Below are positions 1 through 61,537 of a stretch of 64,000 nt of DNA, in pieces; positions within the stretch are counted from its first letter, which is position 1, and every line of letters begins with the position of its first letter. Under the pieces are notes generated by a model. It saw only the letters and a list, made by a program, of their open reading frames with translations, did no database searches and was not told where the DNA came from. The translations under genes were made by a program, and so were the position numbers. The stretch is taken from contig OZ281494.1 in assembly GCA_965637545.1 (NCBI GenBank), positions 682,001 to 746,000 on the forward strand. Reading direction: 5' to 3'. Origin of the DNA: Phallusia mammillata. Lineage: Eukaryota.

Positions 1-3000
1 CCTGTCATGTACAATAAAATATTCGCATTTTTGAAATAAATACCTTTAATTGATATTTTGTTTCAAAACTTAAGTTTCCAATTGTAGTCGATCCATCTAA
101 ATACGGTGTTGTATGTCTTTCGTTCAGGACCAAAACATGGATTTCAACCTAAGTACAACACATTTCTCAAACTATAAAAAATTAACCTGCTTTGGATAAA
201 TGTTACCACTGCACTGAGATTATGTTTATTAATGAATTGATCAAGCCCAGTCCATCTGACCACCACAGTTGAAGCGTTGCATGCATCTCTCTTCACTGTA
301 GCTTTGACTAAAAGTGAAATAATAAGTTTCATTAAAATGCAGCGACGGTTTTGCACTGCATGTTAAACTTGGTTTTATTGCTGTGCAGCAAAGGGAATAT
401 ACAAAACCTATCTCTGTCAATTTTCCCACAGCATTTACTCGGTCATGAGATTTCTAACCTGTGACTTGGTTATATTTGTTATTTGTCAACAATCACTGAC
501 GAGACAAACGATTTATTTGGGTCACGAAATAAATCATAACACAGAGATATAGAAGTAATATAGCCATGACAGTAAGCCGCCATTGCAGATTTTTTCGGGC
601 TTGATGCGGGCCGGATTTCACATTCTGTGTTTGTAATTTTCATCGAAAATGTTACCTAGCTATTAGTAACTTAGTAAATTGAAGCTTTCAGTACACCTCA
701 ATCAATCTGTGTTGATTATGATTATCTGTAACTTGAATCTGTATTGAGCGCACGTTGGTTCAGGACGATTTCTGTAAAAGCACAGTTTATACTAGCTATT
801 AGCAGTTAGTTGCTGGAGTTAACCTACTTCCAAACGGTGCCACTACTCTGAAGTTAGGGTGAAAAAAATGTCTTAATGATCAATAGCCTTTTGATAGAGC
901 TGCGGTTGATAACTGACGCATGATCAAATGTCGTATGACAGCGGGTGATGAAATTTCGAGTGTGAATAAACCGTGCTAAAAAAACCGAAACCGTCCTGTT
1001 TAAGGCATTGTCTATTTTTACCCATCATGAATGCCTTCTCTATTGTTCTTTCTAGCCTTACTTATTTTAGGTTTTCATGGTATGAATCTGTCAATCAATC
1101 TATCCGACACCAGCAAAACTTTTCAAATAAAAAACTGGGTACCTCAGGGCTCCGTACTGGCCCCTACACTATTCAACGTATACATCAGAGACATGTCTAA
1201 AACCAAATGTCTTAAATTCGGCTATGCGGATGACTGGGCACTAAGTTTTAAGGAAATTGTCTAACAAGGATTCAAAACCAACTCACAGCTAATCTCACCA
1301 CTCTCCGGGAATACTTCACGACATGGTATCTACAAATGAATACCACTAAAACAGTAACAACTCTTTTCCATTTGGACAATCATCGCGCAAACCAACAACT
1401 CAATATTATAATTGATGGAAAGCAACTGCCCACGGACCCCAATCCGAAGTATCTTGGAATAACATTAGACAGAACTTTAAATTATAGAGAACATTTGCAG
1501 AAACTATCCAACAAGATAAAAACTAAAAACTCACTGATCAACAAACTAGCAGCCACTAGATGGGGAGCAAGTCAATCAGTCCTCAGAACATCTGCCTTAG
1601 CTCTGTGTTACAGCTCTGCAGAATACTGTGCTTCAACATTGGAGCGTAGTACTCACACTAAAAAATTGGACATCCAACTGAACAGAACAATGCAAGTAAT
1701 TTCAGGAACTCTAAAATCCACCCCTATCACATGGCTACCAACAATGAGTGCAATACCTCCCCCACACTTACGACGCAGAGCATCAGCCATGAAGATGATA
1801 CAGAATCTTCAAACACTTCCAGAGGAAATTACCCTCACCAAGATTATAAGACAAGCACCAAAAACACGTAGACTAAAATCCAGGCATCCAATCTACAACT
1901 TAGAGACTGACAACACTTTCGATATGACTGAAGAATGGAAACAATATTGGTTTAATAACATGCCCGCTGGAGGAGAGCTAGTAGACGACCCAACAACTCC
2001 ACTGCCAGGTTTCGACTTAGCACATAGATGTCACTGGGTAGCAGCGAACCGACAGCGATCAAAACATGCTCGCACTGCCCACATGCTTCAACACTGGGGC
2101 GAAAGAACGAATTCGGAATACCCACACTGTGGAGCGGATAAGCAAGATACAGACCATCTTGTCCTAAAATGCCCCACAACCAAGTTACAAGGTGGATATC
2201 GGACAGTACATGAATGCGATACAGCATTCAGCGACTGGTTTCAAAATATATCCGATCACATCTAAGTTTTTTGAGACGTGGAAATCATACGACAATATAT
2301 ATATCAATCTAGCGGGTTTCAACCGCCTTTTCACAACCAATTCGGCTTCGGACTTAAATTTTTGGGTTACGTGTCAAAGGTCTGGGCCTCTTACAGCTAT
2401 GTGGCCTCAAATGTAGGTAAACTGCAGGGAAAACAACTTTACAAACCGTGGCTTGTAATTGAATGCATACGATATTCAATTTGTAAATCATATTATTAAT
2501 TGAGCTAGATTCAAGCCAACCAATTTGCCACATTACTCACGTTTCACTTGACAAGCATAGTAAGCCACTTCCCCTCTGCAGTTCATGCTTGACTGCTCCC
2601 ATCCGATCCCATAATGCAACGCTCCCTGCTGGCAGGTTGTAACGTTGGAAACAGGAAAGTTTGCCGGAGATCCATCACTCCAATACCAACCATTCAACGA
2701 GGCGTTGTAACGAGTTCCAATAATGACATTTATATCTTTAAACACAAAATTTGCAACAGATTTTACTATTGTAAAGAAATATCGCTTATATTTTGTGTTT
2801 AACTATCAACAGAAACTAACTTGGTGTTAGGAATGATCCTTTGGTTTTTGTAAATTTTTTATATGACTTTTTCACACTTCGCAGTTTGTATGCATTTCGT
2901 CCACCAAAATAAATAAAAATTTTCTTTTGGCGTTTTCTGGTATTGTCAGCAAATAATGTATAGCGTGACGTCCACCCTACAAACCGAAATTCAATAAAAA

Positions 3001-4167
3001 AGTGGATTTTAGTAATATGTAAGGTATTCCATCCAGTATTTGTTTGTAAACTATGTTTATTTTGACTTTAACACAAAAACCTCAGTAGGTTAGGTTTCAA
3101 ATGTAACTGCAAATGAGTCTAAACGCTAAAGAATTTTAGGAATAAAACGTAATATATAAATTTACAACTAACTACTCAACACAAACCATTCCAATTCCCT
3201 TTTTTATCCAAGCCTTCACAAGTTTTTCCGACAGTTACTCCCCACTTGTAGTTGGGTTGATTTCTCCAACAATCACAAAAATAGATCGGTTGTCTTCTGT
3301 TTTGCTGATTGCTAAAAAAATATTGTCAATAGTAAACGTAGCAACCTCCAATAACTACGGTTTAGTTAATAATTCAGCCTTCATTTTGTTGTTGACTGTT
3401 AGTGGATAGTTAATGTCAGATGTTATTACCTTTTATACAAGTCAAAATACCACAGATGTCCCAGAGATTTTGTCGTTTTCCAAGTTCCATTTTCAACCGG
3501 ACTTTTCGAGTATTTGTATTGTTGATAATCAGGTTTGTAAAAAACATAAACCCGTTGCAAATCTGAAAAAGAATCTTAAAAATCACATGATATTTGATCA
3601 TAAAAATTCACACAATGAAAAATTCATATGTTTGCTGAATTTGAAACGAAATTATTTTATTTATCTCGTTTTCTTGCTTCATCTTAACCTGTCGTATATT
3701 TGTCTGTCATGAGTTGAGTGAGAGTTGTGTTGATCTGTGGGTCATTAGTCATTGCAAGATTTCCACCCAGCAAAGAACATTTTTTCTGTGCATTGTTTGC
3801 ATGCCTTTCATCGTCAGATAATATCAACACACTGTCCTTCACTGTTTGGAAAGTCTTTCTGCAACCTGTGATATTTATTGGTTTAATTTGACCTGAAAAT
3901 TTTAGTGGCGTGTAAATTTGTTTGTAAGCGATTCTGAATGAATAATGTCTGGCACTTTAGATACAATTGTTACTAAATCCAAGATGAAAGTCACAAAGGT
4001 CAAAAATCGAGGCCCGTTTTCACTTGACAATATCTGGATTTCAAATACAAGAATACAAGTAAAAACAAAAACTTTTCATTATTGGAAACATGGTTGTACT
4101 TACTGTTGATTTGTCCTTTAGAATAATAAACCAATAGCAATATCATAAAAATATTGCTTCCTGTCAT
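1..4167 (-). CDS. Paralog A: 5' part of a multi-exon CTLD-FN3 receptor (probably a receptor PTP); continues off the left edge
   Basis: GT-AG exons in compatible phase: signal peptide 4104-4167 (MTGSNIFMILLLVYYSKGQIN); CTLD exon 1 3689-3865; insert exons 3430-3562, 3187-3311, 2821-2976; CTLD exon 5 2541-2735 (IIGTRY..GWYWSDG..C..GWEQ..C..YACQV); FN3 exons 207-307 and 44-148. The next acceptor falls at position 1. No stops in the visible exons. The cytoplasmic part is not in the window. Confidence 0.85.
1090..2470 (+). mobile_element. 5'-truncated, frameshifted non-LTR retrotransposon (RT C-terminal half plus CCHC-like tail), antisense within an intron of paralog A
   Basis: ORF 1031-1264 has PQGSVLAPTLFN and YADD. 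After a frameshift near 1245-1260, ORF 1336-2265 has PKYLGITLD, RWGA..LRTSALALCYSSAEYC and a degenerate knuckle (YPHCG..DTDHLVLKCP). Ends are approximate. Confidence 0.9.
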
Positions 4168-9967: not shown

Positions 9968-12900
9968 TCACTTGAAGTTTGAATAAGTGTCGAAATCAGA
10001 CAGATACTGCAAGACGACTGAGTAGCAGTATTTGTACAGTTCCTGTAACAAAATGTATTCAATATTATGGGAAAAGTTTTAATATTTCAATCCAGAACAT
10101 TAAATAAACACAGAATTTAATCTTGCTTGTTCAGAAGTCAGAAATATGAGACCAACTTTCAGTATTCCTATTTGCTTTATTACATAAAACATTACCTTGT
10201 TGTCGACCATATTCGGTCTCATATCTCTCAGGTCTTTCACAGTTCGGAATACATCCACCCGCTTTTGTGCCTTCAAACGTTCGAGAATGTTCACCAGAGC
10301 GATGAAGGTCCCAGTTCTTGTTGATCCGTTACTGCAAATAAATCAAGTTGATTGGATTCGGTATTTTGAAAGTTTATACCAGAAAAAAACGGCTCTAGAA
10401 AAAAAAAAACGTTTTTGGATAATGTCAAAGGTGTCTAAATTGATATTGTTTGCAAGACTTTTTAACTTGAGGCATAAAGCAGTTTGGGAATGATAAAGTC
10501 GTTTACTTAACCGAAATCAAATGTACATTTCAGGTAGTTTGGTTTTAGAATTGATGCTGATATGCAGAAATATTGTTTACCTGCATCCCACCAACACACA
10601 CTGGCAAATCTGTTTTGCATTTAGTCGTTGCATTTCCTCGATAATTTTAATGAAGTCCATTTCTTTCGGGGGTCGTTTCACGTCACTCCATCCCTTGACT
10701 TGCAGAAGCATCAATTGCTGGGGAGCCTAAAATACGGAGTACAAAGATTCAATCGGAATAATATTGTACAAGAGATTTGAGATTCTATTATATTATCTAA
10801 TCTAACAAAACATAGCAACAAGGCTGCTTACAAACGCCTTGGTTGCAGACCAGACGTTGGCAGTGATCAGATTGTGAAGTTTATTCTCATTCACATCACG
10901 AACCGATACCGAAATGTCTTCGTATTGTAAAGCTGCATTGATTGGAATCTGAAAACGATGTTGTTTTAGTCAATGTTTAGTCAAACATTTTTACGCTGCT
11001 TTTTAGGTTTACTTGAATGCTGTTGTCCAAATCAACGACAAGTGAAGCTCCTCTGTCCACGATCATCTTCCAAAAGTTTTCTTCTTCTCCTGGAGCAGGA
11101 TTTCTTGCTGCGACAAAGAATTCTGAAGACCCTTGTTCCTGTATGTTGTCAAAACAAAGAAAGAGCATTTTTGGAAACGAGTAAATGTATTTTAACTACT
11201 TTAAAAAACAACAACAAACATTTACACTGAGAATGTAAATTTTATTCTGACCTGGATATAGGAAGCATCCAGCTGTTCAATGCTTTGGCTTTTATTGTCC
11301 AAAACTTTCACCGCCGTGTTCTTGTCTGAAAAATAACATGACCTGTAATTCGTGAGTAAGTAAAATATTGTCATCCATTTGTTTACATGTTCTGAGCTGT
11401 GGGTGGTTTTCCTGCCATTCTTCCCCAAATCTCCACGATGACAACGTGTTGAATTCTTTGTTTTGCATTTGCTGGCTATACAAGTTAAACCATTGGCTAA
11501 TTAGTGAATTACCACAACAACTCCTATACGAGTTTGACAGTTTATATTACCAACATGTATGCATTAATTCACTTCGTTGCTATAAAATTGCTTACAAATC
11601 ACTTGAAGTCATAGACGGGAGTTGAGTTACATCTTTATCTGTTTCCTCCAAACATTCGCGCTCCATGAGCAGTTTGTAGACAAACATGTATTGTTTCTAT
11701 AAATACACAAAGTTGGTAAGTGATGGGTATTTAATATCCAGTGTGTTGGCTGAAGTTGATTTACTTATTGTAAGGGTTCATTTCTGAGACTTACCGAATT
11801 TTGAATCATGTCGATTCGGTTCTCTCTCATTTTCAGAACGGATCTTGGCACGTCAACTGATCCCTTGTCGTCAAATTCATGAAACAAACTGTCCATCGCT
11901 ATGTAAGTACCTGTGCGTCCCACTCCAGCACTGCATACATATGTGTAGTTGATTGATCAAAACAACATAGGGTTTGTCAAGCCTTTACCTGCAGTGCACA
12001 ATGATTGGAGCATTTGTGTTTTGCAAATCATCGACCATGTTACGTAGGTGGATCATGTTGGATGTAGTTACTGGAATCCCATGATCGGGCCAAGTTGTAA
12101 ACTGCAACTGTGTTATGGTTCGTTGTTCCTAGGGATAAAACTCGCGTGATCATGTGATTAAGTTTCCTTCATGAAATTTTGCATGACAAAACCCTAATGA
12201 TAATCAAGATACTTAGAAAAGTAGGTTTGTTTTCGTTAATGCTACAAAAACTCAAGAAAATATTGTGTAACTTTCTACCTGCTATTGTTGTTGTCCAATC
12301 TCATGCCAGTTTTATTTTGCATGAAAACTTTATACGATACCGTTTGAGTATAACAAATATCTGTTAGACATTCACTTTTTTAAACAAGTTTACACATACC
12401 TTGGTTGAAGACAAAACGAACTGTCGTTGAACGATGCCACCGATGGTTACTTCATGTTGTGTTCGAACTTCCAAATTCGACATCTTAAGTTCGGATTCAT
12501 TATCAGGCCAATACTGTTCACACTTTGACTGCATGTAAAACACGTTGAAGAAGGGATAACTGTTTCTGAGTTTGAATACATTCAAACCCGACATTTTTAA
12601 CACGAAAGCAATGCCGATAGTTACCTTTCCGTTTTCCACCAAGCCAGTAAGCATTACGATGATGTTGGAGTTTTCCTGCCAAACCATCAACCAGAAATCG
12701 TTGATTGTCTCCTTCTTCGGACCCTGAGTGGCGATGAACTTCCTCTCGTTATCGTAACCCGGTATATAAGCGGCGTTGATGTAATCGTTTCCACCGCTTC
12801 CTTGCAAAACCACTCGAGCATGATCGTCTATTGAACAAACACAAGTCAAATCGACAAAATAACCTTTTCCCCGCAATTTTGATGAATGGGAAAAATCAGC

Positions 12901-15900
12901 CAATTTCACAAACTCATTTATGAAACTAATTGCATTTCGTGTTTCGCTACTTACAAGGGAAAATATTCTTGTACCGGTTTCTCACAGCATTTTGCGGCAA
13001 CTGTGACACGTCATTCGTTCGCTGGTTAGTTTTGCTTTGTTCTTCAATCTCCTAGAAGAAGTAACAAAAATATGGAATAAATAGCACTAGTTTACTGTAG
13101 TTTATTTAACTTGACTTTACATGCAGATTTTTGCCATTGTTTTGACTCTAACCTCAAACTCGTTGGCAAACATAATTCCTGACTCAACATTTTTCTTGTA
13201 CACTTCAAACAAGTTGGTGACTTTACAGTTTCTAGATGCACCAGCAGAAGGAGATAGGTTTTCGTATGTCACTTTTCCTGTTTAAACCGTAAAGTGTGAA
13301 AGTAGTGTATATCGCTATGTATATGTGCTAATTTAATGTACAGAATTCAAAACCAAGCCAGGTAATGATTGCAAACTTTACCTGTGTGAGATGCAGCGGT
13401 AAAATTGTTTACTTGTGGATATTGATCTTTTCTCATTCTATAAAAGCAATTAAACATTACGTATTGGTTCTTTAATTGCTTTCCCTCTCTATTTGTATTT
13501 CAATTGTCTTATCAGATTTTTAGTAAATTGCCTAGAAGCCTGAATCACTGCTATTATCAATGCAATGGTTTGTCTTACATTAATATGACTCAACATGAAT
13601 TCACTTTTTAGCATTTACCCATGTTGATTGAAAGGGAGGAATAAACTGAGTGTTTGTCCCATAACTTTTCGCTTGAAATCCTTTTCAAAAAAACTTTCGT
13701 TTGAGTGTGAAATCACAATAGTACTTTTAATATCAGTTTATTCCTCTTTCTCAATCAACATGAATAAAACCTACAAAGTGAATTTGCGTCGAGTCAAATC
13801 AATATGAGACAAACCATAGCTTCGATTAAAGCTGCAACGTAAAATTTTAACACGCCAAATGAATCATACACAAACCTTTGTCTCCGACGTATAAACATAA
13901 TCACCAGCCCACCAATAACAAGTACCAGAAGCAACAGCCCGATCACCAGACCAGCAATCGTTCCATGAGTCATTGGATGCTTGGCCGTGTTATCTCGTAA
14001 ACAACTTGGTGAGGGTTTATCCGGATTTGTTACTGTTACATTGGATGTGATGTTTGTGTTTATGGAGCCAGTAACAATCACTGTGATCTATAATATCAAA
14101 AAAAGAGTGTTTGGGCGCACCAAATTATAAGAACTGTGCTTACCAGGATTTCATACGAAGTAGAGTGAATGATATCTAGGATTGCGATGGAATTATCATG
14201 ATACGGGACGGAGATGGTTTGATTCAAACCCTGGACATGAATCTCAACCTGCATGTTGATGTTAGCCAAGAAAAGTTTAACGTGGTTTTGTTTGACAACC
14301 AATAAGAACTTTTATCTATACCTGCGCTGTTAGATCGTTGTTGTTGATGAATTGATTAAGTCCATTCCAACCGACAAGCACAGTTGAAGCGTTGCATGGA
14401 AACGTCTTTGCAGTTGTGACTACTACAATGCAATTAGAAAAGTTGGTTTACAATATGGGCGGTTAATCAAGGCTTGTAGTCGTTTCTTGGAAACTATATT
14501 CACTAGAAAGTGATTAACATTAAGTTTGTTTTCCACAATTTCAGTGCAACTTTCAACCAACAAGTTTATTTTTACCTTCAGGGTAACAGCTTTGAGGGGG
14601 ATTACCCGGAGTTGTTACTGTCAGATTGGATGTGATGTTCGTGTTGATTGAACCAGTGACAATCACAGTGACCTGCGATACATACAATTATGGTTCATGT
14701 CTTGGTTGTTTTAATGTTATGTTATGAATTTTAGTAAAACAGAGAGTGTATACTGAAAACGCTCAAAAGAAAGAGGTTCATTACCTGAATTTCATACCAA
14801 GAAGAGTGAATGAGATTTTCTATTATTGTCGAATTGTCAGAATAAGGGACAGAGTTTGTTTGGTGTGAACCATGAACTTGAACCACAACCTGCATGTGTT
14901 TAGGATTCAAAAACAATTCAACAAAACACAAACTTTGTTTTAAACCTGCGCTGTTAAATCGTTGTTGTTGATGAATTGATCAAGTCCGGTCCAACTGACA
15001 AGCACAATTGAAGCGTTGCATGGAATTGTCTCTACAGTCGCGTTTACTAAGAAAGTCATAGATAAGTTATAAACACATAAAGTTTATCAAAATTATGAAC
15101 ACCTTGGCTTACCTGGAGGATAGCAAGTCGATGGGAGATTTTCATAAGTTGTTACTGGCATGGAACTAGAAACGTTAGTGTTTATGCAACCCATTAGCAT
15201 TGCAGTGAGCTGTGAATATCAAAGTTGTTTAAAGTTGTTATTTATGAAGGACTCCAGTACAAATAGATAAACTTAGATGAACAGTTTAGGCCTAGGGCAA
15301 TTTTTATTTTTGGTTGCATCATTCGATAATGAAAATGTTTAAGTGGTGGCTGCTCGAACCTATCAAGCAACATAAATTGAATTCAAATTTGGGTTAGAAG
15401 GGCATGTTTGTCGTTTATTGTATTTCAATCGATTTGATTTGTTTGGTGAATATTTTTAACCTACTTACAGTGAAGCTATACTGTGTTTCGAAGCTTAGGT
15501 TTCCAATGGTTGTGTTTTGATCTGCATACGGTGCTATGATTCTCTTGTGTGTTTCCAAAACGTAAATTTCAACCTGAATGCAATGTTTGTAAAAAGGCAT
15601 GACACCTGCATGCCAAAAAACTTAATGCGATGAAATATAACCTTTGCATTGAGATTATTATTATTGATGAATTGATTAAGTCCAGTCCAACTGACAAGCA
15701 CAGTTGATGCGTTGCATTTAGATTTCTTTACATAAACCTGGACTAAATGTGGATAAAAAGGTTAAATGTCCATGGCTGCAGAGGAACCAGAAAAAGCTGT
15801 AATAATTCGCCAAAAAACGCCAGAACAAGCACTGTATCATTGAAAAACAAATCATCAAAACGCTAAAGATATTAGGAACCCTAATCTGTAATTAGAACAA

Positions 15901-17895
15901 AATTGTATTATTTAGATATATGTAAGTGCACAAACGAATAAAAAAGATTGGAGAATCATTTTATGAAGCTCTGTCCATCGTTTACCTGAGCAAAATAATT
16001 TGTTTTAAAATTCTCACATGTTACTTGACAAGCGTAGTAAGCCGGTTCCCCACTGCAGTTCATGCTTGACTGATCCCATCCGATCCCATAATGCAACGCT
16101 CCCTGCTGGCAAGTTGTAACGTTGGAAACAGGAAAGTTTGCCGGAGATCCGTCGCTCCAAAACCAACCATTTGACGACGTGTTATAACGAGCTCCAATAA
16201 GAATCCTAATGTCTAGAACAACATTTCCGAATCTTATTTAAAAATATAAATAAAAGATCGGTAAATATTTTCTTTTTGTGTATGTTTTCAAACCAAACGC
16301 TCACTTGGTGCCAGAAACGATCCCTCGTATTTTGTAAAAGTTTGATACGGCTCATTGACACTGCGTAACTTGCTTGAATATGGTTGCTGCGTTTTCCTTC
16401 CATAGTTAAATATTTCTTTTTGAAGTTTTTCTATGTTAGTGTTGGAATACAAGGAATACTGGAAATTCCAGCCTGCAAACAGTACAGATTTCGTTGCAGG
16501 TCAACACTATGTAGGTTTTTGTTTGACTACAGTAATAAAGATTAAAGGAAAACGTATTAGTTTAAACGGGATGAATAGCAAGATAGTAATAAATAAAAAG
16601 TGTAAGTGGTGAGTTATACAAAAAAATCATTTTATTGGAAATCTACACGCTTTAAATAAAACAGTATAAACAGCATTTTGCCATTCATGACTAATTTTGT
16701 TTCGGTTGTTGTTGGAGAATTTAGAGACCTTAGTGTGTTTGTTGCATTGTGTAATGTTTTGCTCAATTTAGGCCTCAACGAAAACAATTATTACAACTTA
16801 AAAATTTTAGCACCGACATTGTGGAACGTTAATAAAGCTGAGTAAAACGTAAACCTTTGACCCCACAGTATCTTCCAATGGTCACATTCCACCTCTCAAT
16901 GCCTTCGAGCGAAACAAAAGAACAGAAGCAAATTTTTTGACTATGAGTTTCAGGATTGCTGCTGGATAATACTTGGTTTAACTCTTTGTATCAATTAGTT
17001 TGTAAGTTATTTAAAAGTGTCACCTTTTGTACAAGTCGAAATACCACAGATGTCCAAGCGACTTTGTACTAGTCCAACCCACTTCAGTCGGATTTTTTGA
17101 GTATTTGTATCGTCTAGGATCGGTGGTATTGTAAAAAATATAAACTGTTTCTAAATCTGAAAAAAACGTTACGATTACTTGCTTTTTCTCTAATCTGTGG
17201 CAAGAATGATGTAAAATTGGTTGATTTAAAGCTAACTTTATGCCTAACTATGGTTACAACATAGTCTGTCGTTTAACTATTAACTACTATAATTACAATA
17301 TCATTGTTTTTCTTTACGAAACCTGTTGTGTATTTGTCTGTCATGAGTTGATTGAGAGTTGTGTTGATCTGTGGGTCATCAGTCATTGCAAGATTTCCAC
17401 CCAGCAAAGAACATTTCTCCTGTGCAGTGTTTGTATCCACAAGATCGTCAGATAATATCAACACACTGTCCTTCACTGCTTTCAGTGTCTTGTTGCAACC
17501 TTAAAATAAAAGTGTTCACGTTTTCAGGAGATTGGTGTGTTTGCTATTGTTTGGCTTTCATGATCTTGTTGTAGCTTGAAATATATTTACTAGTGTTCAA
17601 TTCAAATCACTTGCACCTTATGTTTGGGAACTAATCGTTTGTTCTTTACTTTCGCTTAAAATGTCACATCTTGAGCTTTTAGTTTAAATTACACAAAACC
17701 TAAGCAAAAATTACAACATGCAGAAGAGCAACATCTTCCAATGATCGATCAGTAATCTTGCACCATCACCTTTTGTTTTACAAATTGTACCCACATTGTT
17801 GTACATTATTGTTGGACCTACTTACTATTGTATTGTCCCGTCGAACACTGAATCAAAACCAAAACCAAAATATTACTTAGGTTATTTCCCTTCAT
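9968..17895 (-). CDS. Paralog B: complete receptor-type protein tyrosine phosphatase (signal, split CTLD, 3xFN3-like, TM, D1, D2); 30 exons, about 1206 aa by hand count
   Basis: Exons: 17826-17895; 17323-17499; 17024-17156; 16855-16958; 16305-16472; 16018-16212. FN3: 15642-15742, 15469-15573, 15113-15209, 14946-15046, 14785-14889, 14576-14672, 14322-14422, 14144-14248. TM: 13876-14087. Juxtamembrane: 13382-13437, 13153-13277. D1: 12955-13051 (NRYKNIFP), 12625-12827 (DYINA, FIATQGP), 12400-12528 (KCEQYWP), 11989-12128 (WPDHG, VHCS), 11795-11930 (AGVGRTG), 11596-11696. D2: 11387-11475, 11252-11325, 11013-11138, 10832-10948, 10581-10726, 10196-10331, 9968-10042 (FDTYSNFK*). All phases join with no internal stop. 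Confidence 0.93.
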
Positions 17896-19010: not shown

Positions 19011-22000
19011 TTATTTTGTTGGTGCAAGTAGCACGTCATTTGCTAAGCTGTACAAAATAAAATAAAAACGAAATTTTAACTCTATGCTATGTGGCAACTC
19101 TATGCGTGTGTCTCGCTTCTTAAGTAATTTACCATTTGTAGGCCTGTCAGAAACAAAATAAGCTCGATTTAAATTCAATTAACTTATATACCTTACTCTA
19201 AGTATCAGCCTAAGAATTCAAATTCTGACGTAGTTTGAGAATGCATTGAAACAAAATGACAGAAGATCACCTCTCAAAATTGATAAATGACAATAATACA
19301 TTGTTACATAAACTTATCTATCTTAAACTTTCAATTAAAAACATTGACCTGTGTGTTCGGCGCACAAACATGACCACCAGGCCAACATTGACAAGTACCA
19401 GAAGCAACAGTCCGATCACCATACCAGCAATCATTCCAACTTTAGTTGCGTAATCTGCTGTGTTATCTCCAGGAAAACAGCTTGGTGGGGGATCACCCGG
19501 AGTTGTGATATTTGTGTTGATTGAACCGGTGACAATCACTGTGACCTGCGATGTATCAAAAAATATGTGTCGGGTCTGGGTTACTTTGATCTTATGTTAC
19601 GTAGAGAGTTATTCTTTTTAATTTTCTGCCAAAACAGGGAGTGAATTTTGAAAGCGAACAAAATAAAAAGTGTTATTACCTGCATTTCATAGAAGGTAGA
19701 GTAATTGAGACCTTCGAGTACTGTAAAATTGTCTGAATACGGATATGAGATGGTTTGGTGCGAACCATGGACTTGAACCTCAACCTGAATGCAATTGGGT
19801 GCAATGAAGGATTCAAATAACAGTTCAACAAACCCGAAACTTTGTTTTCCACCTGCGATATTAGGTCGTTTCCGTTGATTAATAGATCAAGTCCGGTCCA
19901 TTTGACTAGCACGGTTGAAGGGTTGCATGGAAATGTCTCTGCACTCGTGTTTACTTCGAAAATCATTGGTAAGGTTTGAAATTCAAATTCCACATTTTTA
20001 CAAACCACGTTTGCTTACTTTGAGGATAGCAACTTGATGGGGGATTTTCATTAGTTGTTACTGTTTTTGTTGTTGAGACGTTGACGTTTATGCATCCTGT
20101 AAGCGTTGCAATGATCTGAATATCAAAGTTGTTTGAAGTTGTTGTTTTTAAAAGGTTCCAGTTTAAACAGTTAAGTTTAAAAGAATCAAACAGTTCTTGT
20201 ATGTTTTACTTTAGTTACATTATTTGGTAATTAATATAAGCTTAGTTGTTTGGTTGTCTATCGGCTTCAACTTTGCCATCGAACGAAATACATTGCATTC
20301 AAGTATGTTTTGACAGCGATATATTTCAGATAGATGCAAACTTTTCCAGTGATTAATTTGCACTACTTACAGTGATCTTATATTCTGTTCCAAAGCTTAG
20401 GTTTCCAATTGTTGTGTTTTGATCTGCATACGATGCTAAGATGGTCTTGTTTACTCCCAAAACAAAAATTTCAACCTAAATACAACATTTGTAAAAAGGC
20501 ATAACACCTGCATGTTTAAAAAAACTTGATGTGATGAATCAATACCTTTGCATTGAGATTGTTATCGTTGATGAATTGATTAAGTCCAGTCCAACTGACA
20601 ACCACAGTTGATGCGTTGCATTTGGATTTCTTTACACCAGCCTTAACTATAGGTTGGTTAAAAGATTATATGACTTACTGGAATAATACAACGCTGTAAT
20701 ATCTTGCAAGAAACTTCACAATGAAGTCATGCAATGTATCATTTAAAAATCATCAAATCGCAAAATATATTAGAAATGCTTTTCTTGTAATCTGAACACA
20801 ATCGTTTTGTTTTGATCTGTTAGTACAGAAACAAATCTAAACAATACAGAGATATTGTGTGAAGTCTCTCGTTTACCTGACCTAAACGAATGTGTTTCGT
20901 AATTACTCACATTTTACTTGGCAACCGTAGTAAGCCGGTTCCCCACTGCAGTTTATGCTTGACTGCTCCCATCCGATCCCATAATGCAACGCTCCCTGCT
21001 GGCAAGCTGTAACGTTGGAAACTGGTAAGTTTGCCGGAGAGCCGTCGCTCCAATACCAGCCGTTCACAGACGCATTGTAATGAGCTCCGATTAAGAGGTT
21101 AATGTCTGGAAAAATTTGCAAATCTTACTTAAAAATATAAACAACAAAATCGTTTTTTGTCTTTGTATGTTGTCAAACCAAACGCTCACTTGGTGCCAGA
21201 AACGATCCGTCATATTTTTTGAAGTTCTCATACGTCTGATGGACACTTTGCAACTTGCTTGAAGAAGGCGGTGTATATCTTCCGTAGGTAAATATTTCTT
21301 TTTTGCGCGTCAATGTGTTAAATTCGGAAAATAAGGAATACCGGAATTGCCATCCTGAAAGCAGTACAGATTTAGTTGCAATTCAACCCAATGCAAAAAG
21401 GTTTTTGTTTGACCACGGTAATGAAGATGCAAAGGAGAAGGTATTAGGAACACGGGATGAATGGCAAGATAATATCAAAAAAGTGTAAGTTAGGCATGCC
21501 GAAAAAAAATTATTGGAAAACTACACGATTTAAATAAAACAGTATAATCAGCATTTTGCTATTTATTAACAATTTTGTTTCGGTTGTTGGAGAATTAAGA
21601 GACCGTAGTGTGTTTGTTGCCTTGTGTAATGTTTTGAGTAAGTTGAGACATCAATAAGAACATTTAATACAACAGTTTGCTATCTTTGTGTAAAATGTTA
21701 GTACCATCGTTTTGTGGTGGAACGTTAATAGTTACTTAAACACAAACCATTACGGGCACAGGTTCTTCCAATGGTCACATTCCACCTCTCTGTGTCGCCT
21801 CTGATTTCATAATTGCAGAAGTAAATTTCTTGGCTATGAATTCCAGGATTGCTGCTGGACAATAGTATGTTTAACTGTTTGTATCAATTGGTTTGTATTT
21901 AAAACTGTCACCTTTTATACAAATCGAAATACCACAGATGTCCAAGAGATTTTGTACTTTTCCAACCCACTTCAGCGGCATTCTTTGAGTATTTGTATCG

Positions 22001-22746
22001 TATTGGATCGGCGGGATTGTAAAAAATATAAACTCTCTCTAAATCTAAACGATACTACGATTACGTGATTTTTCTCTATTCTAAAAATAATGTACAATGT
22101 GTTCATTTAAAGCTAAGCTTATACGGAACTATGGTTACAACATAGTCTGTTGTTGAAATATAATCTATTTACTGTTTCATTATTTTACATCCTAACCTGT
22201 TGTGTATTTGTCTGTCATGAGTTGAGTGAGAGTTGTGTTGATCTGTGGGTCATCAGTCATTGCAAGATTTCCACCCAGCAAAGAACATTTCTCCTGTGCA
22301 GAGTTTGCATCCACAAGATCGTCAGATAATATCAACACACTGTCCTTTACTGCTTTCAGTGTCTTGTTGCAACCTGAAAGTAAAATCGTATGCGTTTTCT
22401 GGAGATTGGTATGTTTCTCCTTCATTGCTTTCATGATTTGTTGTATTTAATCGGTAATTTAAATCCCTCGAGCCATTGCTTTTTTTAAATTATTCGTTTA
22501 TTCTATGCCTTAGCTTTAGGTGATACCTCTTGAGCTTCTAGATTAAAAATGCACAAAACCTTAAAAAAAATTAACATCCACACGTGCAACACCTTTCAGT
22601 CAGTAATGTTGCTCCATTACTATTTGTTTTATCAATTGTTCTTACATTATTATTGGTTTTTGTTGGACATACTTACTGTTGCTTTGTCCCGTCGAGTACT
22701 GAATCAAAACCAAAACCAAAATATTACTTAGATAATTTCCCTTCAT
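19011..22746 (-). CDS. Paralog B': CTLD-2xFN3-TM receptor with no phosphatase domains (short tail)
   Basis: Signal exon 22677-22746 (MKGNYLSNILVLVLIQYSTGQSN); CTLD/insert exons ~22198-22374, 21911-22043, 21748-21857, 21190-21354, 20910-21104; FN3 exons between 19680 and 20650; TM exon 19349-19545. All open and in phase. No PTP exon lies between the TM exon and the paralog-B upstream region. The terminal exon ending at 19011 (SLANDVLLAPTK*) is tentative. Confidence 0.8.
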
Positions 22747-30500: not shown

Positions 30501-32758
30501 TATTGTCAGATTAAAATCCCTGACGCGAATCTCGACCTGCATGTTTGTGACATATTTTTCATTTGATAAGAAACAACGACAAAAATGTATGTTTTACTAC
30601 CTGAGCTGTTAGATTGTTAATGTTGATGAATTGGTCAAGTCCAGTCCAACTGACAAGCACAGTAGAAGCGTTGCATGGAAATATCTTTGCAGTCGCGTTT
30701 ACTATGAACAACGTTGTTAAAGGTGGAAGTAGTAAATAGTTCCTTATAAATAATTGGAATTGAATATTCAACATAACACGTTGGCTTGCACAGAATCGCT
30801 TACTAAAACATATTTCCTATGCATGTTACTAATTTTAAACGAAACTTGAATCCATAACAGTAATAGGAAAACCACAATCCAGGCTGGGTAGTGAGCGATT
30901 ACAGGTTTTGTTGTTTTATAATTACTTACGTTTTACTTGACAAGCGTAGTAAGCCGGTTCACCACTGCAGTTCATGCTTGACTGCTCCCATCCGATCCCA
31001 TAATGCAATGCTCCTTGCTGGCAAGTTGTAACGTTGGAAACGGGAAAGTTTGCCGGAGATCCGTCGCCCCAATACCAACCATTTAACGAAGTGTTGTAAC
31101 GAGCTCCGATCAGAACATTGATATCTTAAAAATGCTTGTGTTGGTGTACCCAAATCATCATGGTTGTTTTTGCGTTTTTTTTTAAAAATATAATCGCTTA
31201 CTTGGTGTCAGAAACGATCCTTTGGAAATGTTAAAACTTTCATATGACGCATTAACACTTCGCAATTTATACGAATTTATGCCACCGTTGTAGTTAAATA
31301 TTTCTTTTTGGCGTTTCCTCTTGGTAGTGTCGGAAAACAAAGAAAACTGTAAGGTCCATCCTGCAAATATCACATATTGTAACAAATGTGTCTGTTGTTG
31401 CTGACTAAATGAAACAGCTAAAACTATTAATTTGCAATCGGCTTCTTTGCGATATCTAAAGTAACTGATTTGTTTCAACTCACACCGTTCCATTTTCCTT
31501 CACTATCCGGCCCTTCACATGTTGTCCCAATATCTACTCTCCACTTGTAATCCGGTTCTGTCCAAGCATCGCAGAAATAAATGGATTCCATCGTATTTTT
31601 GACATTACTGTTGGACAAAAGTGGTTGTGTTAATTTTGACAAACAAATTTGAAACATTATTTGTCGTCAAATAATCTGATAAAGTTTTTAACCTTTCATA
31701 CAAATCGAAATACCACAGATGTCCAAGAGATTTTGTACTTTTCCAAGGATACACTTCATTCAAATTATACGAGTATTTGTATCGCCTATTTTCGTCTTCG
31801 TAAAAAATATAAACCCGCTGTAAATCTGAAACAAATGTTTATTCAATATATTAAAAATTACAATTAAAAATGTTTTTTTATTTATAAAAAGCCACCACAA
31901 ACCTGTTGTGTATTTGTCTGTCATGAGTTTAGTGAGAGTTGCGTTGATCTGTGGGTCATCAGTCATTGCAAGATTTCCACCCAGCAAAGAACACTTCTCC
32001 TGTGCAGTGTTTGCATCCACAAGATCGTCAGATAATATTAACACACTGTCTTTCACTGCCTCCACAGTGTTATTGCAAGCTAAAAAATCAATTCGCGGTT
32101 AGTTTACATTTTTCCTAAGTAATGATTATGTACTTTGTAATCCAGAGTGATTACGCTCTGAAGCAAAAACACAAACACTATTTATGATTTTTACTGTTAC
32201 TAAGAAGGACGAACGTGACTTTGAACAACAATACTATGGTCCATCCCAAACTGTAATTCGGAAGCAAAGATACTTCAGATGCTTTTGTATTTGTTTCATG
32301 ACACCAAAATGCGTAACGTTGGTTTCGTGAGCAAAACGTTTCTTTGTCGACCAAGTTAAATGTCCGATGTCTATTTTCATAATAACTTTCTTTAGTTTGT
32401 TTAGAGCTCAAACAGGGCTGGGTTACGCAACTACCGTACGATGATTTATAACAAGGATGATTTTAACAGATGTAACCAACTTCCATCGATGTAATCAGCT
32501 GAATTTAAAAAAATCGCAAAACTTTTGCTAGAAATGCCAATGCCAGAAACAATTCATTTTTGTTGGAGAACATTTGTTTAATTCCTGAAGTATGAAAGTA
32601 AAACACTATTTTTGTACAGTAAAAAATACTTCAAAAAACTTTTATTTCATGTATTTAACGCTAGTAGGCTACTTACTGTTTGCTTGTCCCGTCGAATACT
32701 GAATAAAAGTTAAAACCAAAAATGTCCTCAAGTCATTACTCTTTATAGCTGAGAGCAT
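24526..32758 (-). CDS. Paralog C: complete receptor-type PTP (split CTLD, 2xFN3-like, TM, D1, D2), 27 exons
   Basis: Signal exon 32677-32758 ([27 protein letters not shown]); CTLD exon 1 31903-32079; insert exons ~31692-31824, 31490-31610, 31203-31360; CTLD exon 5 ~30930-31124; two FN3 triplets; TM exon 29174-29388. D1 has KNRYKNIFP (~28290-28388), [38 protein letters not shown]2 ends FDTYSNYK* at 24526. Confidence 0.9.
29870..30030 (-). mobile_element. tRNA-derived SINE copy in an intron of paralog C
   Basis: The reverse complement gives a B-box remnant GTTCAATTCCCACCGCAGG and body GACCGGCTGATTCGGT..ACGCCTTTAATGGGCCT, matching the SINE at 61209-61470. Confidence 0.7.
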
Positions 32759-39648: not shown

Positions 39649-42600
39649 TTATGTTTTTGTTTCGTATGTAGGGTTTTCATTTGTTGCTCTGTAGTTTTCG
39701 TATTCATGTTGATCTGTAGTTTTGTCGTCAGAGTTTGCTGCAAAACAGATTGTAAATTCCATTGTCAACAGTTTGAGGCTTTTAACTCATACAATAAGTT
39801 ATTGGATGTGTAATGTGTTGGGTTCAAACTTTGTACGATAAACTTGAGTCTTTGCAGCAGAAATTTTTCTTACCTTCGTTACTCTGATGTGGAAACTGTT
39901 CCTGAGTCGCTTGTTTTTTTTAGATGCTTTACTATTTGAAGTTCTGTGGAAACAAATTTTGCTTATTATGGTGCTCTGTGGGAAAAACGAGTGTTTGGAA
40001 TTGAAATTAAGTTGGGACAGCAATCGGACCTAGAGTTTGTGGTTCTAATCTCTAACTGTTTCGAGTTTAAACAAAGTAAACAAATTGCTCAGCTGGTGGA
40101 ACAAAGGTAATTAAAACAGCTGCGATTGCAGGCACCTGCGTCTTCGGCGAATAAACATGACTATTAGCCCAACCATGACAAGGAGCAGAAGCAAGAGGCC
40201 GATCGCCAAACCAGCAATCATTCCAACACTCGTTGCAGGTAAACCGCACGAAGGGGGATTACCTAAAGTGGTTACTGTCAGATTGGATGTGATGTTTGTG
40301 TTGATTGAACCAGTGATAATTACTGTGACATGCAATACAAAGATGTTTTGTTGTTGTACGTGATAAACTATAATGGCATGTGTCAAAAACCGACGGATTA
40401 TAATTCTACAAAAAGTTACTTACAAAAATATGGTATGAAATAGAAAGCAAGAGATCTTGAATTATTGTCGTGTTATCTGAATACGGGACGGAGATTGTTT
40501 GATTCAAACTCATGACAACAATCTGAACCTGCAGCAAGGTATAAGTTTGTTTCAACAATTTATGTTTGTCGACTAGAAATCAAACCAAAAGCAACACACA
40601 ATATATTTTGTACCCGTGCTGTTAAATTGTTGTTGTTGATGAATTGGTCAAGTCCAGTCCAACGAACAAGCACAGTTGAAACGTCGCATGGAAATGTCTC
40701 CGCAGTCGTGTTCACTACAAAAATCGTTGTTAAGGTTTGGACACGGTAAATGTTTCCTAACTCTTGGAATTTAATATACCACACAACACGTAGCACGCTT
40801 GCTTACCTGGTGAATAACAACTTGATGGAGGCTTTCCAAAAGTTGTTACTGTTTTCGATGTTGAGACGTTAGTGTTCAAGCATCCGGTAAGCATTGTAGT
40901 GATCTGAAACGTTTAAGCTGTATCACTTAAATTATGCCTTCAATTGAAGCATTCAAAAATTAAGAATCAAGGTCTGGACTTTTAATTTTTATAGGCACTG
41001 ATACGATGCTCTAACTTGACAAATAATTTGTACTTCTACTATACATTGCTTACGGTAATGTAGTAATTAGTTGCTAAACTTAGGTTTTCGATGGTTGTCG
41101 ACAGAATAGCATATGGTGCAATGAATTTTCTGTTCATTTCCAAGACATAAATTTCAACCTAAACGAAACATTTGTTAAAATCAAGAAGTTAACGGACGTA
41201 TATAAACTGTATGTCACTTCTGCATAAAGTTTATTGTTGCGGATGAATTGATCAAGTCCAGTCCAACTGACCAACACAGTTGAAGGGTTGCATGGAGTTG
41301 TATCCATAGTCGCTTTAACTAGAAAAAAGTTTAAATTAAATATTCATGAAAAGCATATTGTCTAGCGACACGATATAAAAGTATGTGCAAACATATTTGC
41401 AAAAAGATCATTGGAACACAAATTAATGTCAAGAAGACATTTACTTGTTTTTGCTGACTGATTTACTTGAAATTACTCACATTTCACTTGACAAGCGTAG
41501 TAAGTCGATTCACCACTGCAGTTTATGCTTGACTGCTCCCATCCGATCCCATAATGCAACGCTCCCTGTTGACAAGTTGTAACGTTGGAAACGGGAAAGT
41601 TTGCCGGAGATCCGTCGCTCCAATACCAACCATGTAACGACGTGTGGTAACGAGCTCCAATCAAAACGTTAACGTCTGAAAAAGAAATGGCAAATACTAT
41701 TTATGCACAACGATAGGTTTTGCATGTCTGGTGCCTAAATGTTGTTGGGTACCCACTTTCCGCCAAGAACGATCCCTCATATATGGTGAAGTTTTGAAAA
41801 GTTTCGTTGACACTTCGTAACTTGCTTGAACGTTTTGGTTTTCCGCGTCTATAGTTAAATACTTTTTTTCGGCTTTTTCTGGTGTAAGTGTCGGAAAACA
41901 AGAAAAACTGTAATGTCCATTCTGTAAACAAACATAAATTAATCAAATAACAATAAATGAGCCTGAGATCTTTTTTATTGACATGGCAATAGGGTAGAAA
42001 TCAAGGTTTGAAACATGGCAGTTACGTTTTGTATTGAGTTTTCGTTCTTTGTGAATGGCTGTATAAACAAACCCACTTTTTACGTACCAGTTTGTTATTA
42101 TGAAAAATAAAACATTTTTTTTTTAAACAAAAAACGGTTACACACAAATTTTGGGTTATTTTTCATACACACATTTTTTTAAATACATAGATTTGACATC
42201 TGCCTTATATAACGGTTAACTAAATTACTAAGTTTATTCACACTAACGGTTCCAATCTCCATTGGGCGCGAGGCCACTGCAATTTCTTCCAATAGTGACA
42301 TTCCACCGCTCATTGACAGTGTTTCTCCCATAGTCGCAAAAATAAATTGGTTGACTTTGGTTTTTAGGATTGCTGTTGAAAAAAATAAAGTAAATATATG
42401 TATATATATTTACATATGTATGGTTACGATTTCCATGGTTGCTGTTAAATGTGTTTACTTGATTAGCAGACCGAAATACCACAGATGTCCGAGAGATTTT
42501 GTACTTTTCCAGAAATCCTCTTCAGCCGAATTGTTTGAGTATTTGTATCGTTCATGTTTGTCTTCGTAAAAGATATAAACCCGCTGCAAATCTGTTTTTT

Positions 42601-43049
42601 GAGTTTTTTTTTGCAATGCAGTTCAACATGAGCATTTTTCAACAAAAAGTAACTACGCATTTACAGCCTTTCACGGGTTTTGAGTGCCGTTGAAGCATAT
42701 CTGTCTGAATAAACATAAGTGCAAACCTGTCGTATATTTGTCTGTCATGAGTTGAGTGAGAGTTGTGTTGATCTGCGGGTCATCAGTCATTGCAAGATTT
42801 CCACCCAGCAAAGAACATTTCTCCTGTGCAGTGTTTGCATCAACAAGATCGTCAGATAATATCAAGTCACTGTCCTTCACTGCTTGATGAGTATTTGTAC
42901 AACCTGTCAAAAAGCCTTTTTTAGAAAAAAAAATTTTTTTTGGTTTTTATAATAAGTTATATTTGGTTTCGATGTAACTTACTGTTGTGTTGAGTGTGTG
43001 AGTAGTGAACAAGAAACAACAACACCACAATCTTGTGACCAGATATCAT
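39649..43049 (-). CDS. Paralog D: CTLD-2xFN3-TM receptor without PTP domains, with a Tyr-motif tail; carries a splice-acceptor lesion and a possible 1-nt frameshift (may be a pseudogene or a secreted variant)
   Basis: Signal exon 42983-43049 (MISGHKIVVLLFLVHYSHTQHN); CTLD/insert and FN3 exons are open in phase down to ~40423. TM exon 40136-40329 has AT instead of AG at its acceptor. Tail exons 39874-39943 and 39649-39737. Confidence 0.72.
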
Positions 43050-61470: not shown

Positions 61471-61537
61471 AGATTTATTAATGAAAATGCAGCAGTTTTG
61501 ACAGTTTCAACTACAGCTTGGCACGGTTTTTACCAAC

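What the first reader, a model, noticed from the sequence alone, without database searches (positions are those of the whole stretch)
16018..17499. The C-type lectin domain is split by a removable three-exon cassette
Seen: exon 1 (phase 1-1, 177 nt) encodes the N-half (..[14 protein letters not shown]..[17 protein letters not shown]). Exon 5 (phase 1-1, 195 nt) encodes the C-half ([27 protein letters not shown]). Joined directly they read in frame as a normally spaced CTLD. In every complete copy three exons (about 130-140 aa, phases 1-2, 2-1, 1-1) intervene between the second helix and the WIG-equivalent strand. Inference: an extra subdomain has been grafted into the CTLD fold, and exons 2+3, exon 4 or all three can be skipped in frame, giving several ectodomain isoforms per gene.
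Basis: partly seen in the sequence, partly recalled or inferred. Interest (0 to 1): 0.85.

Follow-up and report, generated by a model that had tools for sequence, protein, structure and literature searches.

The report
Lectin-like domain split by extra exons
In a cluster of sea-squirt-type receptor phosphatase genes, the outermost lectin-like domain is interrupted by about 135 extra, fast-evolving amino acids of unknown fold, encoded by three exons that are always present; nothing shows they are ever spliced out.

Summary
On the minus strand, 17499-16018 holds five GT-AG exons of 177/133/107/168/195 nt with phases 1-1, 1-2, 2-1, 1-1, 1-1. They splice to an open 259-aa module that follows a signal-peptide exon of a receptor tyrosine phosphatase.

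Six complete paralogues in the window share this layout with no stop codons. So does a contig from another tunicate. Three Clavelina proteins carry the same insert, with exons 3 and 4 fused.

Exons 1 and 5 are the two halves of a C-type lectin-like domain. Their profiles hit almost only solved CTLDs, in complementary positions that abut. Pfam Lectin_C reaches threshold on a homologue only when both halves are present. The confidently modelled C-half matches CTLD second halves in 3D.

The 126-141-aa insert is under purifying selection (dN/dS about 0.28) but changes about four times faster than the halves. It matches no known family convincingly, and tests for a degenerate second CTLD were negative. 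Two AlphaFold runs failed, so its fold is unknown.

In-frame skipping is arithmetically true in every copy. No evidence supports it, and the exon-4-alone option does not exist in Clavelina.

Verdict: a new variant of a known domain, of moderate interest. The scan had noted the variable Cys-Trp-Cys loop of this cassette on this same window.

The parts
17826..17895 (-). Signal-peptide exon of gene g3 (23 codons plus 1 nt, phase 0 to 1, donor gtaagtag)
   Evidence: ATG, a hydrophobic stretch and a phase-1 donor. Equivalent exons sit upstream of all six copies. Clavelina genes have the same first exon.
17323..17499 (-). Exon 1, 177 nt, phase 1-1: N-half of the C-type lectin-like domain (beta1, alpha1 with the C1 cysteine, alpha2)
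   Evidence: Splice sites. The profile of this exon hits only solved CTLDs, at chain residues about 2-63. 79-95% aa identity among complete paralogues.
17024..17156 (-). Exon 2, 133 nt, phase 1-2: first part of the insert
   Evidence: Open and alignable in six copies, L007 and Clavelina. No CTLD hit in the PDB.
16855..16961 (-). Exon 3, 107 nt, phase 2-1: invariant F-C, W and second C around a variable loop; a variable-length tail in some copies
   Evidence: Length 104-125 nt among copies, always 3n+2. No CTLD hit.
16305..16472 (-). Exon 4, 168 nt, phase 1-1: last part of the insert; fused to exon 3 in Clavelina
   Evidence: No CTLD hit.
16018..16212 (-). Exon 5, 195 nt, phase 1-1: C-half of the lectin-like domain (WIGL-type strand, WxWSDG, cysteines C2, C3, C4)
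   Evidence: 37 of 38 PDB profile hits are CTLDs, at chain residues about 57-125. Homologue C-halves align to Lectin_C HMM 41-106 of 107. The confident part of the model matches CTLD second halves.
10103..15761 (-). Rest of gene g3: repeated ectodomain units, a TM helix (within 13797-14087) and two tyrosine-phosphatase domains (D1 12981-11768, D2 11195-10103)
   Evidence: Open pieces. Pfam Y_phosphatase on five pieces, E from 1e-31 to 2e-3. The FN3-like look of the repeats was not confirmed by Pfam.
2541..3865 (-). Paralogue g1 module (exons 177/133/125/156/195)
20911..22373 (-). Paralogue g4 module (177/133/107/165/195)
30930..32079 (-). Paralogue g5 module (177/133/122/159/195)
41481..42903 (-). 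Paralogue g6 module (177/133/125/165/195)
55360..57144 (-). Paralogue g7 module (177/121/104/159/195)

Best explanation
The region encodes the N-terminal ectodomain module of one member of a tandem array of tunicate receptor-type tyrosine phosphatases. The module is a calcium-site-less, NK-receptor-like C-type lectin-like domain. Its N-half (beta1-alpha1-alpha2) and C-half (beta2 to beta5) lie on two phase 1-1 exons. Between them, at the alpha2/beta2 junction, the family carries 126-141 extra residues that have two invariant cysteines and an invariant tryptophan. This insert is a constitutive, selected part of the protein and dates back at least to the common ancestor of these tunicate lineages. 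Inferred, not shown: it folds as a nested, disulfide-bridged, probably beta-rich subdomain on the conserved lectin scaffold. Also inferred: because it carries most of the differences between paralogues, it sets each receptor's ligand specificity. In-frame skippability is a by-product of the phase-1 junctions rather than evidence of isoforms.
For: Exons and phases. Six open paralogues with whole-codon indels. The same five-exon, same-phase module sits in an independent tunicate contig, L007. The insert is present in three annotated Clavelina proteins, with the two flanking junctions conserved (177-nt phase 1-1 N exon, phase 1-1 C exon). Split CTLD: the N-half profile gives 14/14 CTLD hits at chain residues 2-63, and the C-half profile gives 37/38 CTLD hits at residues 57-125. 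The two abut on 1egg_A and 7jub_A by extrapolation. Lectin_C scores 22.8 bits (cutoff 22.6) in two stretches on P0032:31-290 and is lost if either half is removed. The C-half model (pLDDT 80-91) aligns to CTLD second halves, Z 4.5-2.6, in nearly all of the top 50 rows. UniRef names P0021 a C-type lectin domain-containing protein. The insert is selected: dN 0.325, dS 1.16, ratio 0.28, against dN 0.078 for exons 1+5. The insert is not lectin-like: hhalign scores equal shuffled controls, and there are no CTLD hits in the PDB at E up to 10. The alpha1 cysteine occurs only in exon 1 and the beta5 cysteine only in exon 5. Phosphatase context.
Against: No usable 3D model covers the N-half or the insert (mean pLDDT 47 and 39), so 'nested folded subdomain' is inference. 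Each half-profile E-value is only about 1e-3 on its own. Pfam gave no hit for the window's own single exons, and the window's spliced module or exon 1+5 fusion could not be submitted. The language-model look-up puts the insert nearest to lectin clusters (score 0.90, 103/256 features), which leaves a distant lectin origin open. There are no transcript data, so constitutive inclusion rests on gene models and selection signatures.
Confidence: 0.7

Rival explanations
1. One reading: exons 2+3, exon 4, or all three form a regulated removable cassette. Each gene then makes several ectodomain isoforms, including a plain CTLD.
For: All the skips are in frame in all six copies. The exon 1-to-5 join restores normal CTLD spacing. 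Exon 1 donors are non-consensus GTTnnn in every copy. Exons 1 and 5 have low synonymous divergence, which could reflect splicing-enhancer constraint.
Against: No transcript evidence is available. All three annotated Clavelina homologues include the insert. Exons 3 and 4 are one exon in Clavelina, so the exon-4 skip is not general. The cassette exons and their flanking introns are the least conserved parts, the opposite of what is usual for regulated cassette exons (my background knowledge). Skipping only part of a disulfide-bridged insert would probably misfold it (inference).
Confidence: 0.17
2. The module is an old tandem duplication of a two-exon CTLD unit, so the 'insert' is a degenerate C-half followed by a degenerate N-half. 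The result is either two ordinary tandem lectin domains, or an outer domain (exons 1+5) enclosing an inner circularly permuted one (exons 2-4).
For: The module is about twice a CTLD in length (259 aa). Both junctions flanking the insert are phase 1 and lie just before a hydrophobic strand. Exon 4 (156-168 nt, 1-1) resembles exon 1 (177 nt, 1-1) in size, and exons 2+3 (225-258 nt, net 1-1) resemble exon 5 (195 nt, 1-1). C-x10-W-x7-C in exon 3 compares with C-x10-W-x6-C in exon 5 (by eye). MAFFT repeatedly stacks exon 2 on the C-half. The nearest Atlas clusters to the insert are all lectins.
Against: hhalign of the insert against the C-half, the N-half, and both orders of the two halves scores 9.5-10.9. 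Column-shuffled controls run for the C-half and N-half comparisons gave 10.7 +/- 2.1 and 9.4 +/- 1.9. Profiles of the whole insert and of each insert exon find no CTLD in the PDB at E up to 10, while exon 1 and 5 profiles find almost nothing else (against 35, 36). Pfam reports no Lectin_C inside the insert. The low-confidence models predict mostly strands there, without the CTLD's pair of helices; one model shows a single short helix. The Atlas score lies in the range that shuffled sequences reach 4-10% of the time and was not validated for parts of proteins.
Confidence: 0.1
3. Exons 2-4 are not expressed coding sequence (decayed or pseudo-exons), and the real mRNA joins exon 1 to exon 5.
For: They are far more divergent than exons 1 and 5. 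In the youngest pair, exons 3 and 4 are less alike than the flanking introns.
Against: Frames are open in six of six complete copies with whole-codon indels only. dN/dS is about 0.28. Splice sites are conserved. Homologous exons with the same phases occur in L007 and Clavelina at 27-32% module identity. The exons are included in annotated proteins.
Confidence: 0.03

Closest known systems
Group V / NK-receptor-type C-type lectin-like domains (CD94, NKR-P1, CLEC9A, NKp65, NKp80; Pfam Lectin_C PF00059)
   Same: The N-half aligns to beta1-alpha1-alpha2 and the C-half to the WIGL strand through beta5 of these solved domains. The C1, C2, C3 and C4 cysteines sit in the expected places. As in NK-type CTLDs, there is no EPN/QPD or WND calcium-sugar motif (read from the sequence).
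   Different: The domain is interrupted between alpha2 and beta2 by 126-141 residues encoded by two or three extra exons. The classical CTLD intron positions quoted in PMC514892 (upstream of C1, downstream of WIGL, between C2 and C3) do not include this junction.
Receptor tyrosine phosphatases with a lectin-like ectodomain (for example the predicted Fugu CTLD-containing PTP-GMC1 listed in PMC514892)
   Same: A CTLD is combined with a receptor-type phosphatase. Here there are two Y_phosphatase domains, a TM helix and repeated ectodomain units.
   Different: Here the CTLD is N-terminal and split, and the genes form a tandem array of at least six paralogues. Homology to the fish gene was not tested.
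Pfam DUF7023 (PF22894)
   Same: The three Clavelina inserts hit it consistently (E from 1.7e-5 to 2.1e-4, HMM 25-112 of 185).
   Different: All scores (21.5-25 bits) are below the curated cutoff of 27. Two of the three sequences are 83% identical, so the hits are not independent. No window or L007 insert exon hits it. Nothing is published on the family.
Nested (inserted) domains in general
   Same: One polypeptide segment is inserted in a surface loop of a parent domain whose two halves stay recognisable. The insert's junctions are symmetric in phase, as expected for exon insertion into a phase-1 intron (my background knowledge).
   Different: I found no report of such an insertion in a CTLD. 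The insert's fold and its independence as a domain are unproven.

Membership tests
C-type lectin-like domain (Pfam Lectin_C, PF00059) | Match to the Lectin_C profile at the curated threshold | tested here: inconclusive
   The homologue module P0032:31-290 scores 22.8 bits against a cutoff of 22.6, in two stretches. P0021's module scores 16.4 bits. The window's single exons give no hit. The window's spliced module could not be submitted.
C-type lectin-like domain (Pfam Lectin_C, PF00059) | N-terminal beta1-alpha1-alpha2 segment with the alpha1 cysteine and the GG-x-L-A motif | tested here: met
   The exon-1 profile gives 14/14 CTLD hits in the PDB at chain residues 2-63, best E 0.0015. The predicted secondary structure there is strand(s) followed by two helices, at low confidence.
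C-type lectin-like domain (Pfam Lectin_C, PF00059) | C-terminal WIGL-type strand, WxWxDG loop, and C2-C3 and C4 cysteines | tested here: met
   The exon-5 profile gives 37/38 CTLD hits at chain residues 57-125, best E 0.0014. It aligns to Lectin_C HMM 41-106. The confident model part matches CTLD second halves at Z 4.5-2.6.
C-type lectin-like domain (Pfam Lectin_C, PF00059) | The two halves belong to one domain (contiguous in the profile, jointly needed for detection) | tested here: met
   The halves abut on 1egg_A and 7jub_A by extrapolating the aligned ranges. The Lectin_C hit is lost when either half is removed. That the halves pack together in 3D is not shown.
Calcium-dependent carbohydrate-recognition domain (true C-type lectin) | EPN or QPD motif and WND motif that bind calcium and sugar | tested here: not met
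   Neither motif is present at the expected places in any of the six copies (alignment). This is a lectin-like domain, not a demonstrated lectin.
Receptor-type protein tyrosine phosphatase | Signal peptide, TM helix, and an intracellular Y_phosphatase domain with the C-x5-R signature (my knowledge of the family) | tested here: met
   Signal-peptide exons. TM stretch. Pfam Y_phosphatase on five open pieces covering two domains, E from 1e-31 to 2e-3. The C-x5-R type signature (CSAGVGRTG) is visible in D1.
Pfam DUF7023 (PF22894) | Profile match at the curated threshold | tested here: not met
   Clavelina inserts score 21.5-25 bits against a cutoff of 27. There is no hit for window or L007 insert exons.
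Alternatively spliced cassette exons | Transcripts with and without the exons | not testable with these tools
   No transcript data were available. Only the frame arithmetic was verified.

The most novel reading that the evidence does not exclude
The module is a frozen intermediate of circular permutation by duplication. An ancestral two-exon CTLD duplicated in tandem. The outer halves (exon 1 plus exon 5) now pair to form the conserved, disulfide-locked lectin-like domain. The inner halves (exons 2-3 plus exon 4) form a nested, circularly permuted, fast-evolving lectin-derived domain that diversifies ligand recognition among the phosphatase paralogues.
Probability: 0.1. Interest if true: 0.8.

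Novelty: new variant of a known kind. Interest (0 to 1): 0.5.

Why it matters
C-type lectin-like domains are among the commonest animal recognition modules. I found no report of one carrying a whole extra polypeptide of domain size between helix alpha2 and the core beta2 strand. Here such a form is conserved across tunicate lineages and amplified in a tandem array of receptor phosphatases. Nearly all the paralogue differences fall in the insert. If the insert is the ligand-facing part, these genes would be a family of diversified surface receptors wired directly to phosphatase signalling in an invertebrate chordate. That would bear on self/non-self recognition and innate recognition in tunicates. 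It would also give a natural test of how much insertion the CTLD scaffold tolerates. None of this is shown yet; the finding is a well-supported gene-structure and homology result with an unresolved fold.

Tried and rejected
1. My first reading frame for exon 2, which gave a WVGL-like motif, was wrong. Phase 1 out of exon 1 forces another frame.

2. P0001 looked like a natural N-half joined directly to a C-half. It is a prokaryote-style ORF call on a metagenome contig, that is, intron read-through.

3. Testing the insert as a degenerate CTLD copy or internal repeat gave only negatives. These were hhalign against the N-half, the C-half, N+C and C+N (shuffled controls were run for the separate C-half and N-half comparisons), exon 2 against exon 4 with its own shuffles, and PDB profile searches with the whole insert and each exon.

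4. Structure prediction failed twice: mean pLDDT 47 (A7) and 39 (A8). The family is too thinly sampled, and spliced window proteins cannot be given as single rows. Alignments with exon fragments (A1, A4, A5, A6, A9, A10, A11) were misaligned by MAFFT and discarded.

5. Word-based homologue searches with the Clavelina modules found only Clavelina proteins. The long multi-stretch hits are bacterial repeat proteins, where checked (P0013).

6. DUF7023 is sub-threshold and seen in Clavelina only, with no literature.

7. Atlas look-ups gave weak lectin neighbours and nothing else.

8. L001, L004, L006 and L009 were searched for insert-less or extra modules. Only partial exons turned up and no insert-less form.

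Full report
**What is there.** The window is AT-rich (about 36% GC), and the feature reads on the minus strand with GT-AG introns.
- exon 1: 17499-17323 (177 nt, phase 1-1)
- exon 2: 17156-17024 (133 nt, 1-2)
- exon 3: 16961-16855 (107 nt, 2-1)
- exon 4: 16472-16305 (168 nt, 1-1)
- exon 5: 16212-16018 (195 nt, 1-1)

The spliced product is an open 259-aa module. Joining exon 1 to 5, exon 1 to 4, or exon 3 to 5 also stays in frame.

**Gene context.** A signal-peptide exon lies at 17895-17826. Downstream come repeated ectodomain units, a TM helix and two tyrosine-phosphatase domains (Pfam Y_phosphatase on five pieces). The module is therefore the N-terminal head of a receptor-type tyrosine phosphatase. 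Earlier notes on this window had described these genes that way.

**More than chance.**
- A segment-HMM map of the window shows six complete N-E2-E3-E4-C modules on the minus strand. It also shows a truncated N-E2-E3 copy (6482-5917), an orphan C-half fragment (45769-45674) and a lone N-half (61712-61539). No copy has N followed directly by C.
- Splice sites of exons 1, 2, 4 and 5 project cleanly onto all six copies.
- Exon 3 had to be placed by frame and splice logic. It is 104, 107, 122 or 125 nt, always 3n+2.
- All six copies splice to open 251-264-aa products with whole-codon indels only.

**Outside the window.**
- An exhaustive profile-free search with exon 5 found two full-length relatives, P0021 (592 aa) and P0029 (1090 aa, two phosphatase domains), from the ascidian Clavelina lepadiformis. 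It also found short ORF fragments from metagenome contigs.
- The window's module aligns end to end with the Clavelina modules, insert included (27-32% identity, E down to 6e-31).
- Exact protein-to-genome matching shows this Clavelina layout: a 177-nt phase 1-1 N-half exon, a 112-118-nt phase 1-2 exon, a 254-266-nt phase 2-1 exon (the window's exons 3+4 fused), and a 210-213-nt phase 1-1 C-half exon.
- A 35-kb metagenome contig from another tunicate (L007) has the five-exon form, 180/136/86/174/195 nt, with the same phases as the window.
- The two junctions flanking the insert are therefore old. The exon 3/4 intron differs between lineages.

**Are exons 1 and 5 one lectin-like domain?**
- Single exons give no Pfam hit, so I built profiles.
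- The exon-5 profile (19 sequences) hits 38 PDB sequences at E up to 10. Of these, 37 are C-type lectin-like domains (CD94, CLEC9A, NKR-P1, NKG2D, mincle, dectin-1 and others), always at chain residues about 57-125, starting at the WIGL strand. The best E is 0.0014.
- The exon-1 profile (12 sequences) hits 14 sequences, all CTLDs, at chain residues 2-63 (beta1-alpha1-alpha2). The best E is 0.0015.
- On the mannose-receptor CRD4 entries 1egg_A and 7jub_A, extrapolating the aligned ranges makes the end of the N-half and the start of the C-half fall on adjacent residues.
- Pfam Lectin_C reaches its curated threshold on the Clavelina module P0032:31-290 (22.8 against 22.6 bits, two stretches, C-half on HMM 41-106 of 107).
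- That hit disappears when the N-half, the C-half or both flanks are removed. The second stretch is therefore the N-half, and the two halves are needed jointly.
- In the first AlphaFold model only the C-half is confident (pLDDT 80-91). An all-against-all structural search with low-confidence parts trimmed matches it almost exclusively to second halves of solved CTLDs, including the tunicate lectin TC14 (Z 4.5-2.6 over 54-73 residues).
- No EPN/QPD or WND motif is present, so this is a lectin-like domain of the NK-receptor kind, not a demonstrated sugar binder.

**What is the insert?**
- It is real coding sequence under constraint. Nei-Gojobori estimates over all 15 pairs give dN 0.325, dS 1.16 and a ratio of 0.28 for exons 2-4. 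Exons 1+5 give dN 0.078, dS 0.30 and a ratio of 0.26.
- Positions invariant across the three lineages include two cysteines, a tryptophan between them and several aromatics.
- It has no convincing relative. The whole-insert profile finds nothing in the PDB at E up to 10.
- The three per-exon profiles find only noise: crystallin, antibody YYC motifs and a flagellar protein.
- The Atlas structure look-up gives TM 0.27-0.36.
- Pfam gives only DUF7023, below threshold (21.5-25 against 27 bits), in Clavelina only and not in window or L007 exons. Nothing is published on it.
- Both low-confidence models predict mostly strands in the insert; one shows a single short helix.

**The duplication idea.** Several observations suggested the insert might be a degenerate C-half plus N-half left by a tandem CTLD duplication:
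- The module is twice a CTLD in length.
- Both flanking junctions are phase 1, just before a hydrophobic strand.
- Exon 4 resembles exon 1 in size and phase, and exons 2+3 resemble exon 5.
- Exon 3's C-x10-W-x7-C mirrors exon 5's C-x10-W-x6-C.
- MAFFT kept stacking exon 2 on the C-half.
- A language-model look-up put the insert nearest to lectin clusters (score 0.90 but only 103/256 shared features). With lectins excluded nothing else came close.

Every statistical test was negative:
- hhalign of the insert against the C-half and the N-half scores 10.9 and 10.2. Column-shuffled controls give 10.7 +/- 2.1 and 9.4 +/- 1.9.
- hhalign against N+C and C+N gives scores just as low, about 10.7; no shuffles were run for those two.
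- Exon 2 against exon 4 scores 7.2, against 8.9 +/- 1.9 for shuffles.

I keep the idea as a 10% rival. The cysteine pattern fits exon 1 pairing with exon 5 rather than with exons 2-3: the alpha1 cysteine occurs only in exon 1 and the beta5 cysteine only in exon 5. So does the rate pattern of conserved, variable, variable, variable, conserved.

**Isoforms.** The frame arithmetic is correct in all six copies, in L007 and in Clavelina. That follows from phase-1 junctions, which are common in extracellular modules (my background knowledge). Nothing here shows skipping:
- No transcripts could be consulted.
- The annotated Clavelina proteins include the insert.
- An exon-4 skip is impossible in Clavelina.
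- The cassette exons and their introns are the least conserved parts.

Exon 1's uniformly non-consensus GTTnnn donors and the low dS of exons 1 and 5 are compatible with splicing-enhancer constraint. They are equally compatible with gene conversion.

**Limits.**
- The window's own spliced module and the exon 1+5 fusion could not be scored against Lectin_C or folded, because spliced sequences have no reference.
- Both structure predictions failed for lack of family depth.
- dS values above 1 are saturated.
- The half-profile E-values are individually weak. The case rests on their specificity, their complementarity and the joint Pfam behaviour.

**Verdict.** The split lectin-like domain is supported. 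The grafted-subdomain reading is plausible but structurally unproven. The isoform claim is untested. This is a new variant of a known domain in a tunicate receptor-phosphatase family, of moderate interest.

Noticed in passing
window, all six modules (exons 1 and 5 against exons 2-4 and the introns): Synonymous divergence in exons 1+5 (mean dS 0.30) is about a quarter of that in exons 2-4 (1.16) and well below intron distances (about 0.9). High similarity stops within about 15 nt of the exon edges. This suggests gene conversion confined to these exons, or strong synonymous constraint.
   Followed up: partly
window 16305-16961 against 21190-21854 (g3 and g4): In the youngest pair, exons 3 and 4 are less alike (72.0% and 74.5% nt identity) than their flanking introns (78-81%), while exon 1 is 97.7% identical. 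The g3 exon 4 peptide is closer to g7's (65%) than to g4's (58%). This hints at exon exchange among paralogues or accelerated change; the difference from the introns is only about 2 sigma.
   Followed up: partly
window 12621-12846, 27229-27454, 50307-50520: A stretch of about 226 nt is 97-98% identical among three paralogues while the surrounding sequence is about 76% identical. It coincides with the exon for Y_phosphatase HMM 12-83. This is another locally homogenised exon.
   Followed up: no
window 6482-5917; 45769-45674; 61712-61539: These are broken copies. One is a truncated N-E2-E3 module whose exon 2 changes frame near its end. One is an orphan half of a C-half exon. One is a lone N-half with an extra cysteine and no detectable exons 2-5 downstream.
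   Followed up: partly
window, exon 1 donors at 17322, 3688, 22196, 31902, 42726, 56967: All six exon 1 donor sites are non-consensus GTTnnn (gtttcg, gttaag, gttagg, gtttgt, gtttgc, gtttgg). Exon 4 and 5 donors are mostly GTGAG/GTAAG.
   Followed up: no
window 12060-12107, 26524-26571, 49387-49434 (+ strand): The same short plus-strand peptide-like stretch recurs three times, within the stretches between the lectin modules. It is probably a repeated element.
   Followed up: no
L001:6678-6782: A related tunicate contig has an exon-2-like stretch interrupted by three consecutive stop codons, next to an intact N-half exon. It is possibly a decaying copy.
   Followed up: no
window 16889-16933 and equivalents (exon 3 core): The I-Y-F-C, roughly ten variable residues, then W pattern draws antibody V-domain YYC-CDR3-W segments as its top PDB hits, but only at E about 1. 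This is not significant and there is no matching upstream cysteine.
   Followed up: partly
window 60001-62000: GC content rises to 0.42 against about 0.36 elsewhere.
   Followed up: no
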